Sequence record: OQ828465.1
Direction: 5' to 3' (one strand)
DNA length: 64,000 nt
Part shown: positions 28,047 to 59,041 of the stretch, piece after piece
Layout: every line of letters starts with the position of its first letter
Numbering within the stretch: the first letter of the stretch is position 1
The notes under the pieces: generated by a model
The model's database searches: none
What the model saw: only the letters and a program-made list of their open reading frames with translations
What the model was told of the DNA's origin: nothing
Translations under genes and position numbers: made by a program

Positions 28047-28979
28047 GTGATGAGAATTATTGATTATGTACGTGAACTCGCACCAGTTACTGAACGTCGT
28101 GAACTATTAAATCAAATCCGTTCATTACGTGAAGAATATGATGCAACTCTCGCACCAATTATTGACGATGTAGGTGAAGTATTTGGTAATATGCAACTTA
28201 AATCAGATTTAGGTATGCGGTTATCTACTGAACTACGGCGAGCGATTAGTTTTAATACTGAACCGATTAAACTAGTACTGGATACTCTTTCAAATATTCG
28301 TGGTAGCTTTGATATGATCGAAAGCGAAATCCGGCGTTTATTTGCTATTCAGTTTACTAACTCTAATCTAACCTTTGACCGTGCAAACATGTTACGTTTT
28401 GTTGATGGTCTTAGTTTCTATATTCGTTATGGCCGTAAGCTACTACTAAATCTAATTGCACAAGAAGCAATGAAATTAGGTAAGGCTACAGAATTAAAAT
28501 CATCTCGTGCTGAGAAAGAATGGCTATACACTAATATGGCGCAATTCATTACTCTGTATCCAGCAATGAGTCTTAAGACTAATGAACTGAAACAACGCTT
28601 AAGTCGTGCATCTAGTGCTGAAGTCAATGAAGGTACTTATGATGTAGCTGTGAGTGCTCTCTCTATAGCTCAACGTGATCCACTTAACATGGATGGCTTC
28701 TCACCTCGTCAGAACCCGTTCGTGCTATTTGGCAAGTTCTTAGCTGAGTATCAGGTTGAACGTTTTAAAGAAGCTGAGCAAGAATTCCTTGCACTTCAAC
28801 TACGTTTACAAGAAATGCGGGAAATGCAAAGTAATGGTAAAGTGGATGCACGCCTACAGAAGCTTATTAAAGAGTATGAAATTCGTATCTCTGATTATAA
28901 CTATCGCCTAGGTATGATCCAAGATCGCGCATCTGAGTTCTTTGCTAACCATCGTGATCTACTATCTCTTGGTCACTAA
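28047..28979 (+). CDS. Internal head protein (gp90-like)
   Basis: 310 aa, helical/coiled-coil; synteny. Confidence 0.75.
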   Translation: MMRIIDYVRELAPVTERRELLNQIRSLREEYDATLAPIIDDVGEVFGNMQLKSDLGMRLSTELRRAISFNTEPIKLVLDTLSNIRGSFDMIESEIRRLFAIQFTNSNLTFDRANMLRFVDGLSFYIRYGRKLLLNLIAQEAMKLGKATELKSSRAEKEWLYTNMAQFITLYPAMSLKTNELKQRLSRASSAEVNEGTYDVAVSALSIAQRDPLNMDGFSPRQNPFVLFGKFLAEYQVERFKEAEQEFLALQLRLQEMREMQSNGKVDARLQKLIKEYEIRISDYNYRLGMIQDRASEFFANHRDLLSLGH

Positions 28980-29524
28980 TGGAGGACATTGATATGCCAG
29001 CAACTAATGCTGTACGCCCATTTGGTCGTAATTACTCAGGTGGTCAACAACAGGCCATTTCACGGTTCACTGCTCGTCCCGGTGATCCTCAAGTTGAAGA
29101 ACTATATCTTATCTTTACCAACTTTCCTGCACAAACTGCATATTGGGAATTCCATAAGAAAGTTCTAGCTTGTGCTATTCGTCTTTTTAGCGGAAACTAT
29201 AATTGGTTTATTCTACAGGACAATAATAGTAATATTGATAGTTATAATTATCAATTCCTATTAGATACTGTTCGATACATTGCTACGGGTCATCGACGTA
29301 TTTCAATTACCCAATGGCCAATGTTACTAGCTACTGAACCAGATGCTGGTGCACAACTCATTGAACCGCGCGCTGAAATTGCTACTCTCTTTAATGAGTT
29401 AAAATTAGATCTAGATACTGTTTCAATGATCCAGAATTGGGTTAAACACAAAAACGGTATGAATGATCTAATGTATACCCTACATCTACTATTTGGATCT
29501 GTAGAAGTAATAGATAAGGACTGA
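28979..29524 (+). CDS. Virion protein (gp91-like)
   Basis: 181 aa, TAATG-coupled. Confidence 0.7.
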   Translation: MEDIDMPATNAVRPFGRNYSGGQQQAISRFTARPGDPQVEELYLIFTNFPAQTAYWEFHKKVLACAIRLFSGNYNWFILQDNNSNIDSYNYQFLLDTVRYIATGHRRISITQWPMLLATEPDAGAQLIEPRAEIATLFNELKLDLDTVSMIQNWVKHKNGMNDLMYTLHLLFGSVEVIDKD

Positions 29525-29533
29525 GGACTATCT

Positions 29534-30856
29534 ATGACTAATAATTCACTTAGTCATTCGGTCTTACTTGAATCAATCGACGGGGACAGCCCCGTCGATA
29601 TGATCGCTACATGCGATGGATATCTAAAAGAATTATTGCCATCAATTGAAGATATTCAAAGTAGATTAGAATGCACTGAAAAAGACATTTTAGTTAAAAC
29701 CTATACCGATGGCTTATTTCAAAAATATGCAGATAACCAAGATGTTGTTAGTGAACACATTCTAAAAACTGAGAATGTGTCATTAGAAGACCTATCTAAG
29801 ACAGCACGAAATACCTGGGATGAAATGAAAAAATCCCAAGCAAAGCATCGAGATGAGTTAAAAGAGTATGCACGTGTTATTACACAAGGTAATCAACGTA
29901 CTCTTGAACGAATAAACATGCTTTTAGAAAGAGCTGAAAATATTAAGCATGAGCCATTTAAGCAAGAATTAAAATTTAAAAATACTAAACGATTTAGTAT
30001 TGATGGTAAATTCGAACCGACTACAGTTGATCCGATACTCATGCAAGTTAACAACTTGATAGCTTTCTATGATAAATCCCTACTCTTGTATATCCAATCT
30101 GTAGCGGATATCCTTAGGAAATTATCATTTGATGAAAAATGGACTGATAGAGCTGCACAAGACTTTAGTAAGTTTAATGTTAAGAACTGGATGAAGGGTG
30201 CAGTACCTATTAAGAAAGATGATAGATTTAGAGTAAGTTCTACAGTTTATCGTAGTATGCCAGTTCAAGGTAATAAGACTTTATTTGGCGCAGGGCCAAC
30301 TGAAACACAGACTGAAGAGATCAGGGATTGGGATTTTTTAGTAAATACTGTCCGTGATTTTGCCTTTAAGTTTTATACTATTCCTACTATGAAGGATGCA
30401 CCTGAAGGTAACAATACCTTTAAGGTTAATGATACGAGTTCAATTGGAAGACGGTTAGTATTATTAAGCGAAATGGCTAAACGTATAGATGCTAGAAAAG
30501 ATTATGCAACTAAACTAGATTTTGAATTTGGTAGGTTAATGCAGTTAGCCGAGACTAATCGTCAACAAGCTGGTAGGATTCGGGCACAACAATCTAATAT
30601 GCGAAATCGTCAAGCAAAAGTTCAAGATCCGGATGCACCTGATGGCATCCCTGCTATCTCAAATATCATTAATTCAATTACATTAATGATCAATAATGTA
30701 AGTCGCGTTGTAACAGATTTTAGTAATGCTCTTGCTGGTTTAGTCAGAGTAATGGGTCGACTAGTATTCGTGACCGAGTTAGAATTAAAAGCTTACCAGC
30801 GTCCAATTCAAAGACCTACGCAAGAACAAGTAAATAATCCCTCCCAGGTAAGGTAA
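29534..30856 (+). CDS. Internal head protein (gp92-like)
   Basis: 440 aa; LLES and SLED motifs. Confidence 0.75.
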   Translation: MTNNSLSHSVLLESIDGDSPVDMIATCDGYLKELLPSIEDIQSRLECTEKDILVKTYTDGLFQKYADNQDVVSEHILKTENVSLEDLSKTARNTWDEMKKSQAKHRDELKEYARVITQGNQRTLERINMLLERAENIKHEPFKQELKFKNTKRFSIDGKFEPTTVDPILMQVNNLIAFYDKSLLLYIQSVADILRKLSFDEKWTDRAAQDFSKFNVKNWMKGAVPIKKDDRFRVSSTVYRSMPVQGNKTLFGAGPTETQTEEIRDWDFLVNTVRDFAFKFYTIPTMKDAPEGNNTFKVNDTSSIGRRLVLLSEMAKRIDARKDYATKLDFEFGRLMQLAETNRQQAGRIRAQQSNMRNRQAKVQDPDAPDGIPAISNIINSITLMINNVSRVVTDFSNALAGLVRVMGRLVFVTELELKAYQRPIQRPTQEQVNNPSQVR

Positions 30857-56148: not shown

Positions 56149-58392
56149 ATGAGCGTACATGCCCTAAGAGAACTGTTTAAACACAAAGGCGAAAAGAAAT
56201 ACGAAGTCTTCTCAATGGAAGATTTCATTGGCCGCCTAGAAAGTGAAATTGGTCTAAATGACAGCATTGTTAGTCAAGGTCGTTCCCTTGTTAGCACCAT
56301 TTCACATGAAAACTTCGGTACCGTACAAGCTACCGACGTTCAAGATGCTGCTGCAATTTATAACAAAATGCAAATGCTCGTTAACGACTATGGTTTCGAA
56401 CGAGTAAGTTCCAGTGATCCTCAAGTACGTGCTCGTGAAGAACGTGTTCGTGAGAACCAGATCACTGCTGCTACCATGGCTGCTATCGCCTGTGCTGATG
56501 AAACTAAATATATCCGTGCACTACGTGGTATTACCAAAGCTAAAGCTTCTAACGAAGATCATGTTAAGGTTGTACAGCATCAGTTCAATGGCCCTGCTGG
56601 TGGTATTCAAGTATTCGAAAATGGTGTTGGCCTAGAGAACTATAACGAGAAGTCACAGCGTGATTTCCGTGTTGTAACTATTGGTTATAACCTAGCTGCT
56701 AGCCGTCAGGATGAATTCGCTGAGCGTATCTATCCGACCACCGTTATCAACCCGATTGAAGGTGGTGTTGTTCAGGTTCTTCCTTACATCGCTGTAATGA
56801 AAGACGTTTACCACGAAGTATCCGGCGTTAAGATGGATAACGAAGAAGTGAACATGGTAGAAGCCTATCGTGATCCTTCCATCCTCGACGACGAAAGCAT
56901 TGCACTAATTCCTGCCCTAGATCCGGCTGGTTCCAATGCTGACTTCTTCGTAGACCCGGCTCTTGTTCCTCCGTACACCATCAAGAACGAGCAGAACCTA
57001 ACTATCACTACTGCTCCGCTAAAAGCGAACGTACGTCTTGATCTAATGGGTAACTCCAATGCTAACCTACTCATCCAGCGTGGCATGCTTGAAGTTTCTG
57101 ACACCATTGATCCGGCTGGTCGTCTAAAGAACCTATTCGTTCTACTCGGTGGTAAAGTTGTTAAGTTCAAGGTTGACCGTCTACCTCGCGCTGTGTTCCA
57201 GCCCGATCTAGTTGGTGATACCCGGAACGCTGTTATCCGTTTCGATAGCGACGATCTAGTTGTTAGTGGCGATACCACTTTCATCGATGGTTCAGCTGAC
57301 GGTGTTATCAATGATCTTAAGACCGCTAAACTAAGCCTACGTCTAAGCGTTGGTTTTGGTGGTACAATCAGCCTATCCAAAGGCGATTCTAAGTTTGGTG
57401 CTACCGACACTTACGTCGATAAAGTTCTAAACGAGGATGGTCAGGTAATGGATAATGCTGACCCGGCTGTTAAAGCTATTCTAGATCAGCTAACTGACCT
57501 AGCGGTTATCGGTTTCGAACTAGACACTCGCTTCACCAACACTAACCGTCGTCAGCGTGGTCACCTACTACAGACCCGTGCGCTACAGTTCCGTCATCCG
57601 ATCCCGATGCACGCTCCTGTAACTCTACCGATGGACACCATGACCGATGAAGGTCCGGGTGAGGTTGTTAAAGCTCTAACTGTTAACACCAACATCCGTA
57701 ACAGCAACAACGCTGTTAAGCGCATGCTTAACTACCTTGCTCAACTACGTGAAGTTGTACACAATGGTTACAACCGTCCGAAGTTTGGTATCATCGAAGG
57801 TGCACTATCCGCTGTAATGCGTCCGACCTATCGTTACAAAGAACTAGATCTTGAGAAAGTCATCGACACCATCAAGTCTAAAGATCGTTGGGACGACGTT
57901 TGCGCTGCGATCCTAAACTGTGTTAAAGCTGAGCTATTCCCGGCTCACCGTGATTCCAACATTGAAGCTGCCTTCCGTGTTATCTCCGGTAACCAGGATG
58001 AAACTCCGATGTATCTCTTCTGCTCCGACAAAGAGATTGCTAACTATCTAATGACTAAAGGTGACGACCGTACTCTAGGTGCTTATCTCAAGTACGATAT
58101 CGTTTCCACCAACAACCAGCTATTCGATGGTAAGCTAGTTGTAATTCCGACCCGCGCAGTACAACAAGAAAACGACATCCTCTCCTGGGGTCAGTTCTTC
58201 TACGTATCTACTGTTATCGCTGACCTACCGATCACCCGTGGTGGTCACCAGGTTACTCGCGAAATCGCGGCCATTCCGTTCAACCTACACGTCAACAACA
58301 TTCCGTTCGCACTAGAGTTCAAGATCACTGGCTTCCAGAAAGTCATGGGCGAAACTCAGTTCAACGGTAAGCTTGCTGATCTTAAGCCGTGA
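56149..58392 (+). CDS. Major capsid protein (gp120-like)
   Basis: 747 aa, strong codon bias, propeptide sites SMED, SHEN, GLEN; recognised as the phiKZ-type MCP. Confidence 0.92.
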   Translation: MSVHALRELFKHKGEKKYEVFSMEDFIGRLESEIGLNDSIVSQGRSLVSTISHENFGTVQATDVQDAAAIYNKMQMLVNDYGFERVSSSDPQVRAREERVRENQITAATMAAIACADETKYIRALRGITKAKASNEDHVKVVQHQFNGPAGGIQVFENGVGLENYNEKSQRDFRVVTIGYNLAASRQDEFAERIYPTTVINPIEGGVVQVLPYIAVMKDVYHEVSGVKMDNEEVNMVEAYRDPSILDDESIALIPALDPAGSNADFFVDPALVPPYTIKNEQNLTITTAPLKANVRLDLMGNSNANLLIQRGMLEVSDTIDPAGRLKNLFVLLGGKVVKFKVDRLPRAVFQPDLVGDTRNAVIRFDSDDLVVSGDTTFIDGSADGVINDLKTAKLSLRLSVGFGGTISLSKGDSKFGATDTYVDKVLNEDGQVMDNADPAVKAILDQLTDLAVIGFELDTRFTNTNRRQRGHLLQTRALQFRHPIPMHAPVTLPMDTMTDEGPGEVVKALTVNTNIRNSNNAVKRMLNYLAQLREVVHNGYNRPKFGIIEGALSAVMRPTYRYKELDLEKVIDTIKSKDRWDDVCAAILNCVKAELFPAHRDSNIEAAFRVISGNQDETPMYLFCSDKEIANYLMTKGDDRTLGAYLKYDIVSTNNQLFDGKLVVIPTRAVQQENDILSWGQFFYVSTVIADLPITRGGHQVTREIAAIPFNLHVNNIPFALEFKITGFQKVMGETQFNGKLADLKP

Positions 58393-58473
58393 GCTGGAAA
58401 GGGTTACCGTTATCTAGAAAATGGGACTATCCGTTATTTGGAAGACGGTAATGCCCGGAAGTTAGAAGAGTAA
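58393..58473 (+). other. In-frame 26-codon extension behind the MCP UGA (candidate readthrough)
   Basis: AGKGYRYLENGTIRYLEDGNARKLEE*; the terminator starts only after the TAA. Confidence 0.55.
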
Positions 58474-58482
58474 CAGACATAG

Positions 58483-58502
58483 GCCCTCCCTTCGGGGAGG
58501 GC
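58483..58502 (+). terminator. Intrinsic terminator of the MCP transcript
   Basis: GCCCTCCC-TTCG-GGGAGGGC, then TTTATG. Confidence 0.9.
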
Positions 58503-58528
58503 TTTATGTTGTATTACATTAAAAAAAG

Positions 58529-58545
58529 TTTAAGATCTATATTAC
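58529..58545 (+). promoter_or_regulatory. Early (virion RNAP) promoter
   Basis: TTTAAGATC-TATATTAC upstream of the gp121-124-like genes. Confidence 0.85.
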
Positions 58546-58588
58546 AGTAATGATCATGATCTTCTAATTTAAAAATAGGTTAATCCAA

Positions 58589-59041
58589 ATGAACGTTCAA
58601 TTATTTCCAGAAGTCATCGAAAGATGGCAAGATGCCCTAAGGGTATCTCTTATAGAAAAAAATACCATGGTAGATAATAAGATGTCTACCGTAGATGATG
58701 ATAAATACATTAATACTTTCTTTGAAGAATTCCATCCTGTTCAGGATGTCTTTATGCCCAAAGGGCTAGAGGACTTTATTACTGATTATGCCAAGAAAAA
58801 CATTGAGGAGATCCTTCAAGAAAAACAGTTTAAGCGGGCCACCGAAAAGTTATATTGTTCGAGTGACCCGCATAAATGGCAGAAATCAAGTAATAAGGAA
58901 AAGAGTGAATCCTTTAAGGGAAGGTCCGTACATCAAACTAAAAAGAGGCTCCCCAACATTGTAGATTTGGAGGCCGTTGTGATTAAGGTAGATTTCAATG
59001 GTAACACTAAAAATTGCGGGGCTTACTCAAGTATCAGTTAA
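58589..59041 (+). CDS. Hypothetical protein (gp121-like)
   Basis: 150 aa, ATAGG SD. Confidence 0.7.
   Translation: MNVQLFPEVIERWQDALRVSLIEKNTMVDNKMSTVDDDKYINTFFEEFHPVQDVFMPKGLEDFITDYAKKNIEEILQEKQFKRATEKLYCSSDPHKWQKSSNKEKSESFKGRSVHQTKKRLPNIVDLEAVVIKVDFNGNTKNCGAYSSIS

What the first reader, a model, noticed from the sequence alone, without database searches (positions are those of the whole stretch)
58387..58502. Possible UGA readthrough adding a repeat-bearing 26-aa tail to the major capsid protein
Seen: after the MCP stop (CCG TGA, 58390-92) the same frame continues AGKGYRYLENGTIRYLEDGNARKLEE TAA (58473), and the terminator begins only after this second stop. The tail holds an 8-residue-period repeat, RYLENG / RYLEDG / RKLEE. 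The first two copies differ by synonymous or conservative changes (CGT TAT CTA GAA AAT GGG vs CGT TAT TTG GAA GAC GGT), which suggests selection on the protein rather than the DNA. Established: minor C-terminally extended coat proteins exist (Qbeta A1 by UGA readthrough, T7 10B by frameshift). Inference: a minority of capsid subunits may carry this tail as a docking peptide for decoration or fibre proteins.
Basis: partly seen in the sequence, partly recalled or inferred. Interest (0 to 1): 0.85.

Follow-up and report, generated by a model that had tools for sequence, protein, structure and literature searches.

The report
Leaky-stop tail on phiKZ capsid protein
Just past the stop codon of the giant phage phiKZ's main shell protein lies a short, well-preserved in-frame coding stretch. 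It is almost certainly made when ribosomes occasionally read through the stop, so a few shell subunits would carry a small extra peptide that also ends another virion protein.

Summary
The phiKZ-type major capsid gene (56149-58392) ends in TGA. The same frame runs 26 more codons (58393-58470) to TAA, just before the terminator.

Comparison with relatives strongly favours translation:
- All 24 distinct relatives with such a tail, from at least seven genera, end the capsid gene in TGA. The tail is 24-30 codons and every length difference is a whole codon.
- Six columns are (nearly) invariant amino acids encoded by varying codons.
- All 12 clade members without a tail end in TAA, mostly TAAT. One relative has TGA followed in frame by an Ig-like (Big_2) domain.
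- A tree needs at least six changes of tail state, and each matches the stop codon.
- A profile built only from the C-terminal ends of virion protein gp143 (DUF7941 family) finds this stretch alone among all 2263 six-frame segments of the window (E 1.7e-12).

Best explanation: programmed leaky UGA readthrough makes a minor, C-terminally extended capsid subunit that displays a small beta-meander module at capsomer centres. A docking function is inferred, not shown. No peptide or ribosome-footprint evidence exists, and no published report was found.

The parts
56149..58392 (+). Major capsid protein gene (phiKZ gp120 type), 747 codons plus the TGA stop
   Evidence: ORF list. 100% identical to phiKZ-type records annotated as major head protein. 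PDB 8y6v gp120 matches over 747 aa. Pfam PF25620 PhiKZ_MCP is on record for the homologues.
58390..58392 (+). First stop codon, TGA, the proposed leaky (readthrough) stop. The next base is G here; in relatives it is A in 16, G in 7, C in 1 and never T
   Evidence: TGA is present in all 24 tail-bearing loci. All 12 tail-less clade members have TAA.
58393..58470 (+). Readthrough extension: 26 in-frame codons encoding the repeat-bearing tail
   Evidence: Translation. Codon-level conservation. Profile of gp143 C-termini hits only this segment of the window, E 1.7e-12. phrog_2935 C-terminal end matches at E 0.083.
58408..58425 (+). Repeat copy 1 (RYLENG)
   Evidence: Arg, Glu and Gly columns are invariant in 19 of 19 relatives.
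58432..58449 (+). Repeat copy 2 (RYLEDG)
   Evidence: Arg 18/19, Glu 18/19, Gly 19/19.
58456..58470 (+). Truncated repeat copy 3 (RKLEE), the C-terminal end of the extension
   Evidence: In 8 of 47 phiKZ-type records the tail is one residue shorter.
58471..58473 (+). Second stop, TAA, ending the extension
   Evidence: In relatives the second stop varies (TAA 15, TGA 6, TAG 3), unlike the first.
58403..58452 (+). Predicted 50-nt imperfect RNA hairpin (about 20 pairs) starting 10 nt after the TGA. A possible aid to readthrough; its status is uncertain
   Evidence: (z -2.9). Controls give only weak evidence that the structure is selected beyond what the peptide dictates.
58481..58504 (+). Intrinsic terminator hairpin of the capsid transcript, followed by a T-rich run
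   Evidence: A hairpin is present at the same place in relatives.

Best explanation
The capsid gene ends in a deliberately weak stop. Most ribosomes terminate at UGA and make the normal 747-residue protein.

A small share decode UGA with a near-cognate tRNA (in bacteria usually tRNA-Trp) and translate 26 more codons to the UAA. This yields a minor capsid subunit with a C-terminal tail.

The tail is a three-repeat mini-module. It has three short strands, each centred on an arginine, joined by Glu-Asp/Asn-Gly turns. It is an old paralogue of the C-terminal end of virion protein gp143 (DUF7941 family).

The capsid protein's C-terminal arm lies at the capsomer centre. The tail would therefore be displayed sparsely at the centres of some hexamers, most likely as a protein-protein docking site.

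Shown here: the conserved frame, selection at the amino-acid level, the link between tail and stop codon, and the homology to the gp143 end. Inferred: that the extended protein is made, its low abundance, the inserted residue, outward display and the docking role.
For: 1. Open frame. All 24 distinct tail-bearing loci from at least seven genera have TGA followed by 24-30 open codons that end just before the terminator. These include Phikzvirus, Miltoncavirus, Pawinskivirus, Phabiovirus, Serwervirus, Tepukevirus, Noxifervirus and metagenomic contigs. The other two frames carry 30 and 24 stops in the first 19 loci.

2. Amino-acid selection. Arg, Glu and Gly columns are invariant or nearly so, while their codons vary: Gly uses all four GGN codons and Arg uses both CGN and AGR. 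All length differences are whole codons. Mean pairwise BLOSUM score per column is 2.22 in frame 0 against 0.79 and 1.07 in the other frames. Nine disjoint pairs all beat position-shuffled substitutions (z 1.95-4.6, combined 8.7).

3. Stop-codon link. Of 36 clade members, 24 have TGA plus a tail, 1 has TGA plus an in-frame Big_2 ORF, and 12 have TAA and no tail. There are no exceptions. An NJ tree needs at least 6 changes of extension state, each matched by the stop codon. The second stop varies freely. In phage ORFs of at least 100 codons, TGA accounts for only 37 of 171 stops.

4. Context. The base after the stop is never T in the 24 tail loci, but is T in 8 of the 12 tail-less TAA loci.

5. 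The peptide is real elsewhere. gp143-family proteins (7 genera, 46 database homologues) all end in the same triple repeat inside an ordinary ORF. An HMM of those ends finds only 58393-58470 in the window (E 1.7e-12).

6. No suppressor tRNA. None of phiKZ's seven tRNAs is a suppressor, and the window has none.

7. Structure. The C-terminal arm (728-747) forms the central six-helix bundle of hexamers and touches the outer protein gp244 in pentamers (PMC11297242; PMC13250141).
Against: - There is no direct evidence that the extended protein exists. No peptide, footprint or density was found in the papers searched.
- The cryo-EM model (8y6v) ends at residue 747.
- Overall pN/pS of the tail is only moderately low: 0.65, against 0.29 for the last 60 capsid codons and 0.47 for the last 15. 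Synonymous sites are near saturation.
- The tail alignment was built on frame-0 translations, which favours frame 0 for distant pairs.
- Twelve clade members do without the tail, so it is dispensable.
- The stretch also folds into stable RNA hairpins, so some of the conservation could be at the RNA level.
- gp143 itself has not been placed in any virion map, so the docking partner is unknown.
Confidence: 0.8

Rival explanations
1. The stretch is a non-coding RNA element of the capsid mRNA's 3' end, such as stabilising hairpins or part of the termination signal. The apparent peptide is a by-product.
For: Every tail folds better than dinucleotide shuffles (z -0.3 to -4.5, mean about -1.8). RNAalifold keeps a 5-pair stem with some two-sided changes. 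The third base of the variable codon before each Arg codon is mostly C.
Against: - An RNA element does not need a fixed reading frame, whole-codon indels, wobble-only variation at invariant Gly, Glu and Arg columns, or a TGA in front of it.
- The same peptide ends a real protein, gp143.
- Synonymous recodings of the same peptides fold almost as well (mean z -0.57, 15 of 23 negative), so most of the structure follows from the peptide.
- Rfam gives no match.
Confidence: 0.05
2. UGA is decoded as selenocysteine, directed by the hairpin that starts about 10 nt downstream (a bacterial SECIS-like element).
For: UGA is strictly kept. A hairpin starts 4-10 nt after it in 16 of 24 loci. From general knowledge, Pseudomonas species can make selenoproteins.
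Against: No RNA family match even at E 10. The apical loops and even the helices differ between subgroups. The relative with the Big_2 extension has an unrelated downstream sequence. Nothing in a surface peptide suggests a redox role.
Confidence: 0.04
3. The tail is a dead relic: an ancestral longer capsid protein was cut short by a nonsense mutation and the remainder is no longer translated.
For: More distant relatives have longer in-frame C-terminal ends.
Against: Mean nucleotide identity in the tail is only 56%, yet the frame and key residues persist. The longer ends of distant relatives are low-complexity and unrelated to the repeat. Where the tail really is lost, the stop has become TAA. 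In one such locus (L034) an out-of-frame remnant of the tail is visible.
Confidence: 0.03
4. Readthrough happens but serves regulation, and the peptide itself has no function. For example, ribosomes entering the region might modulate the terminator, mRNA decay or expression of the next gene.
For: The second stop lies 8 nt before the terminator hairpin in the window. The region is highly structured.
Against: A purely regulatory transit would not conserve specific residues or resemble the end of gp143. The Big_2 case points to display of a folded domain.
Confidence: 0.05
5. The stretch is a separate small gene with its own start, or a small ORF in another frame as two GenBank records annotate.
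For: The Viktualia and HPP-Temi records carry a short 'hypothetical protein' call over this region.
Against: No in-frame ATG, GTG or TTG is conserved in the tail. The other frames and the opposite strand are full of stops. The Viktualia call's coordinates put it in a different frame from the conserved one.
Confidence: 0.03

Closest known systems
Qbeta A1 (readthrough coat protein of an ssRNA phage)
   Same: The coat gene ends in a leaky UGA. A minority of ribosomes continue in the same frame, and a few extended subunits would be built into the shell.
   Different: Here the phage is a 280-kb dsDNA jumbo phage with a T=27 HK97-fold capsid. The extension is only 24-30 residues rather than a large domain. 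It is dispensable in 12 clade members. The product has not been observed.
Frameshift-derived extended capsid proteins of dsDNA phages (T7 10B, T3, Lactobacillus A2, Listeria A118/A500/PSA)
   Same: Two capsid products come from one gene by recoding at its 3' end. The extension is a surface module, often Ig-like (review PMC5009743). The relative L043 carries a Big_2 Ig-like domain in the equivalent place.
   Different: No frameshift is needed: the extension is in the zero frame behind a stop codon. That review lists no readthrough case for a dsDNA phage capsid gene.
C-terminal end of gp143 / phrog_2935 (DUF7941 family virion protein, also described as a holin regulator)
   Same: The same triple repeat sits at the extreme C-terminus (HMM E 1.7e-12). 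The AlphaFold2 model predicts a three-strand meander.
   Different: In gp143 the module follows a globular DUF7941 domain and is made constitutively. On the capsid protein it stands alone behind a stop codon. The two copies within one genome are no more alike than copies from different genomes, so they are old paralogues and not recent copies.
Stop-codon reassignment in crAss-like and Lak phages (suppressor tRNAs)
   Same: In-frame stop codons in late or structural genes are read as sense.
   Different: Here there is a single conserved site, no suppressor tRNA, and TGA serves as an ordinary stop in 37 of 171 long ORFs.

Membership tests
Programmed stop-codon readthrough (leaky UGA, Qbeta A1 type) | An in-frame open reading frame directly after the stop, conserved in relatives | tested here: met
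   24 of 24 tail-bearing loci have 24-30 open codons. The other frames carry 30 and 24 stops in the first 19 loci.
Programmed stop-codon readthrough (leaky UGA, Qbeta A1 type) | The identity of the stop codon is conserved as the leaky type and is linked to the extension | tested here: met
   TGA with an extension in 25 of 25 loci; TAA without one in 12 of 12. At least 6 independent co-changes. My arithmetic from these counts, ignoring phylogeny: Fisher p about 8e-10.
Programmed stop-codon readthrough (leaky UGA, Qbeta A1 type) | A protein-coding substitution pattern in the extension | tested here: met
   The constraint is concentrated in six columns; overall pN/pS is 0.65.
Programmed stop-codon readthrough (leaky UGA, Qbeta A1 type) | A weak termination context or a 3' stimulatory structure | tested here: inconclusive
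   The base after the stop is never T in tail loci, against T in 8 of 12 tail-less loci. A hairpin starts 4-10 nt downstream in 16 of 24 loci. Synonymous-recoding controls give only a weak excess of structure.
Programmed stop-codon readthrough (leaky UGA, Qbeta A1 type) | The extended protein is detected and present as a minor virion component | not testable with these tools
   No proteomic or ribosome-profiling data could be reached, and the papers searched do not mention it.
Frameshift-derived capsid extensions (T7 10B type) | A slippery site and an extension in the -1 or +1 frame | tested here: not met
   The extension is in the zero frame. The +1 and +2 frames are closed by stops.
Bacterial selenocysteine insertion (UGA plus SECIS) | A conserved SECIS hairpin with a conserved apical loop at a fixed distance from the UGA | tested here: inconclusive
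   Hairpins are present but differ in form between subgroups. No Rfam hit at E up to 10. SelB binding cannot be tested.
gp143 / phrog_2935 C-terminal repeat module | A triple Arg-centred repeat at the extreme C-terminus | tested here: met
   HMM of gp143 ends against the six-frame window gives a single hit, E 1.7e-12. PHROG hit on profile positions 157-179 of 180.
gp143 / DUF7941 protein family | The globular DUF7941 domain | tested here: not met
   The capsid tail holds only the terminal module. In gp143 itself the domain is present (Pfam; Foldseek hit to a chain of the phiKZ peripheral baseplate entry 9xqd, E 1e-6).

The most novel reading that the evidence does not exclude
The sparse readthrough tails are the points on the head that engage gp143 or other DUF7941 proteins through the shared terminal module. 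A random subset of hexamers would then carry flexible filaments or adaptor proteins that icosahedral averaging cannot show. gp143 has also been reported to tune the holin. Accumulating capsids could therefore titrate gp143 and tie lysis timing to head assembly.
Probability: 0.1. Interest if true: 0.9.

Novelty: new variant of a known kind. Interest (0 to 1): 0.8.

Why it matters
phiKZ is the model nucleus-forming jumbo phage, and its capsid has been solved at near-atomic resolution and mapped by proteomics. Even so, this product is unannotated in 45 or more GenBank records and absent from the structural papers I could read.

If confirmed, it would be the only case I know of in which a dsDNA phage uses stop-codon readthrough, rather than frameshifting, to make a second capsid protein. 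I did not find one in the recoding review (PMC5009743) or in my literature searches.

It would also add a sub-stoichiometric, symmetry-breaking component to a capsid thought to be fully described. It would give a first clue to what the conserved C-terminal end of gp143 does. Finally, the evolutionary signature found here (stop-codon identity co-varying with a downstream in-frame module) offers a simple way to screen other phage genomes for hidden readthrough products.

Tried and rejected
**Searches and tests that led nowhere**
- Rfam scan of 58200-58700: nothing meaningful.
- Pfam on the tail alone and on two relatives' tails: no hit.
- Search for capsid homologues in which a sense codon replaces the stop: none of 119 database homologues carries the repeat at its end.
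- Suppressor tRNA: none.
- Co-evolution or gene conversion between the tail and the gp143 end of the same genome: rejected (permutation p 0.99).
- Do tail-less phages also lack gp143 or its end? The pattern-based scan did not return the relevant contigs, so this is inconclusive.
- RNA structure as a selected readthrough stimulator: suggestive against dinucleotide shuffles and against the gp143 coding control, but weak against synonymous recodings. I left it open.
- Structure prediction of the tail itself: not possible. It has 26 residues and the tool's minimum is 30.
- Thomas et al. 2012 proteomics paper (PMC3323674): not held.
- A second TGA in the window followed by a long in-frame ORF (28979-29524): the next gene starts three codons later in the same frame, so this is ordinary.

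1. In my reasoning I once wrote out from memory a short peptide of a known phage protein (the T4 fibritin foldon) and two remembered protease cleavage motifs.
2. My first notebook entry contains a consensus-like pattern of the tail across relatives. This report gives column counts instead.
Full report
**What is in the window.** The window is a phiKZ-type Pseudomonas jumbo phage. A 721-nt stretch around the finding is 100% identical to phage KTN4 and others and 99.4% identical to phiKZ.
- The 747-codon major capsid gene runs 56149-58392 and ends in TGA (58390-58392).
- The same frame continues for 26 codons (58393-58470) to TAA (58471-58473).
- A strong terminator hairpin follows at 58481-58504.

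One open stretch of 26 codons would occur by chance about 30% of the time at this base composition. The case therefore rests on comparison with relatives.

**Relatives.** I collected the 3' end of the capsid gene and its downstream region from four sources:
- GenBank phages of six further genera: PhiPA3, PS119XW, Phabio, 201phi2-1, Psa21 and Noxifer, plus Viktualia (taxonomy line gives no genus);
- IMG/VR contigs;
- metagenome contigs;
- contigs encoding database homologues.

Within the clade whose capsid C-terminal part is at least about 53% identical to phiKZ, there are 36 distinct loci.
- **24 loci** have TGA followed by 24-30 open codons carrying the same repeat, ending just before the terminator.
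- **1 locus** (L043) has TGA followed in frame by a 203-codon ORF that begins with a Big_2 Ig-like domain (Pfam E 4.9e-8).
- **12 loci** have no tail, and all 12 end in TAA. In one of them (L034) the tail-coding stretch is broken by one deletion, which leaves an out-of-frame remnant.

There are no exceptions. Ignoring phylogeny, that is a Fisher p of about 8e-10 (my arithmetic from the counts). On a neighbour-joining tree of the capsid proteins, with the variable end trimmed, at least six changes of extension state are needed. Each goes with the matching stop codon.

The second stop varies freely (TAA 15, TGA 6, TAG 3). TGA ends only 37 of 171 long ORFs in phiKZ-type DNA. The base after the stop is A 16, G 7, C 1 and T 0 in tail loci. 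It is T in 8 of the 12 tail-less loci. From established E. coli work, a stop codon followed by U terminates most efficiently.

**Is it coding?** In an alignment of 19 non-redundant tails, mean nucleotide identity is only 56%. Even so:
- Four columns are invariant (Arg, Glu, Gly, Gly) and two are 18 of 19 (Arg, Glu).
- Both invariant Gly columns use all four GGN codons. The Arg columns use both CGN and AGR.
- All length differences are whole codons.
- Frame 0 gives a mean pairwise BLOSUM score of 2.22 per column. The other frames give 0.79 and 1.07 and hold 30 and 20 stops in this alignment.
- In a test that keeps each pair's substitutions but scatters them over the sequence, all nine disjoint pairs score better than the simulations (z 1.95 to 4.6; combined 8.7).

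Two caveats apply. The alignment was made on frame-0 translations. Overall pN/pS is a modest 0.65 with saturated synonymous sites, so the constraint is concentrated in the repeat's key positions.

**The peptide exists elsewhere as real protein.** A tblastn search with the tail found second matches in Noxifer and Phabio, inside an annotated virion structural protein. That protein is the gp143 family (phiKZ gp143, 201phi2-1 gp228, PhiPA3 gp162). The 201phi2-1 record notes that gp228 was found in virions by mass spectrometry.
- In all seven genera, and in 46 database homologues, it ends in the same triple repeat at the extreme C-terminus.
- A profile built only from the last 30 residues of seven gp143 homologues was run against all 2263 stop-to-stop segments of the window's six frames. 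It hit only 58393-58470 (43.7 bits, E 1.7e-12). The next best segment had E 0.64.
- The PHROG of gp143 matches the tail end-to-end at its own C-terminus (E 0.083).
- Tail and gp143 end from the same genome are no more alike than those from different genomes (permutation p 0.99). Tails resemble tails more than they resemble gp143 ends. The two are therefore old paralogues kept separately, not recent copies.

An AlphaFold2 model of gp143 (45-sequence alignment, mean pLDDT 89) places beta-bridges on either side of each of the three arginines. The Glu-Asn/Asp-Gly stretches form the turns, which gives a small three-strand meander (pLDDT 74-85 there). The model's globular part matches a chain of the phiKZ peripheral baseplate entry 9xqd (Foldseek E 1e-6). 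This agrees with the weak Pfam DUF7941 hits.

A 2026 preprint lists phiKZ gp126, gp127 and gp143 as DUF7941 proteins. It proposes that such proteins form head-to-tail filaments used in host recognition (10.64898/2026.04.21.720040). Another paper describes gp143 as a non-essential regulator of the holin gp142 (PMC12894885; TnSeq preprint). gp143 is not placed in either phiKZ structural paper.

**How it most likely works.**
- *Shown:* a conserved in-frame module behind a conserved UGA; no suppressor tRNA among phiKZ's seven tRNAs or in the window.
- *From established knowledge:* UGA is the leakiest bacterial stop and is usually misread by tRNA-Trp at roughly 0.1 to a few percent.
- *Inferred:* most ribosomes stop, and a few read on to the UAA. 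With 27 capsid chains per asymmetric unit (about 1,600 subunits per head), 1-5% readthrough would give some tens of tails per head.

The cryo-EM paper shows that the C-terminal arm (728-747) forms a six-helix bundle with a 9-angstrom pore at each hexamer centre. In pentamers the arm reaches the outer protein gp244 (PMC11297242; PMC13250141). A tail would therefore emerge at capsomer centres, probably outside, and icosahedral averaging would erase it. The Big_2 domain in the same in-frame slot of L043 fits a display site. What the tail binds is unknown. Docking of gp143 or other DUF7941 proteins is the most attractive guess.

**RNA structure.** The phiKZ tail RNA folds into a 50-nt hairpin starting 10 nt after UGA (z -2.9).
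- All tails fold better than dinucleotide shuffles (mean z about -1.8).
- They fold better than the gp143 sequences that encode the same motif (mean z -0.46; 14 of 15 pairs).
- The first helix starts 4-10 nt after the stop in 16 of 24 loci.
- However, the helices differ between subgroups, and RNAalifold keeps only five pairs.
- Synonymous recodings of the same peptides fold nearly as well (mean z -0.57).

A stimulatory structure is therefore possible but not established. As a sole explanation, RNA structure fails on the frame, codon and stop-codon evidence.

**Other rivals.** I judge selenocysteine insertion, a dead relic, a purely regulatory readthrough and an independent small ORF each to be unlikely. 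The reasons are given in the rivals section.

**Known or new?** All 45 annotated phiKZ-type records (two more have no annotation) list no feature under the tail. Two related records have short automatic ORF calls there. The one I checked (Viktualia) has coordinates that put it in a different frame from the conserved one. Full-text searches found no mention of readthrough of this gene. A comprehensive recoding review lists frameshift-derived capsid extensions in T7, T3, A2, A118, A500 and PSA, but no readthrough case in a dsDNA phage. Only open-access literature could be searched. I file it as a new variant of a known kind: a recoding-derived minor capsid protein, here made by UGA readthrough in a jumbo phage.

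There is no direct evidence that the product exists. Twelve relatives live without the tail, so it is accessory.

Two slips:
None was used.
2. My first notebook entry holds a consensus-like pattern of the tail. It was not used again, and nothing was deleted.

Noticed in passing
L073:2501-3034 (phiKZ gp143, outside the window); homologues L070, L071, L074-L077, L078-L097: All gp143-family proteins (DUF7941; annotated as virion structural protein and also reported as a holin regulator) end in the same triple Arg-centred repeat as the capsid tail. gp143 is not placed in the published phiKZ virion maps.
   Followed up: yes
L043:2966-3580 (metagenomic relative, Logan SRR24755511): The capsid gene ends in TGA, followed in the same frame by a 203-codon ORF that starts with a Big_2 Ig-like domain. 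An ATG two codons after the stop could also allow separate initiation.
   Followed up: partly
window 58500-58512, also 15762, 22830, 45910, 52173, 53844: The motif GGCTTTATGYYGT occurs 6 times in the window against 0.2 expected. At 58500 it forms the 3' side of the terminator hairpin plus the bases after it. The same TTATGCCGT-like string follows the capsid terminator even in distant relatives (Deimos-Minion, RP31, LucasX). It may be a combined terminator and late-promoter signal.
   Followed up: partly
window 58536-58545: TCTATATTAC, between the terminator and the next gene (58589), is conserved at the same place in most relatives. It occurs only once exactly in the window, and at one mismatch it is no more frequent than chance. 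It looks like a promoter for the gp121 homologue.
   Followed up: partly
P0061-P0119 and L025-L028 (more distant capsid homologues): Many relatives at 25-70% identity have longer in-frame C-terminal ends that are low-complexity (rich in Thr, Pro, Gly, Asp and Glu) and very often finish in Pro. This is a different, constitutive kind of C-terminal appendage at the same structural position.
   Followed up: no
window 58468-58470; L099: In 8 of 47 phiKZ-type records the tail is one residue shorter, because the last Glu codon is a stop in those isolates. The tail then ends as in Phabio and Psa21.
   Followed up: yes
window 28979-29524 and 29534-30856: Another TGA-terminated ORF is followed in frame by a long ORF. 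The next gene simply starts three codons later in the same frame behind its own ribosome-binding site. This is ordinary.
   Followed up: yes
L072:1478-1576 (Viktualia); HPP-Temi record: Automatic annotation in two relatives places a short hypothetical ORF over the tail region. The Viktualia call's coordinates put it out of frame with the conserved reading frame, so it is probably a gene-caller artefact.
   Followed up: partly
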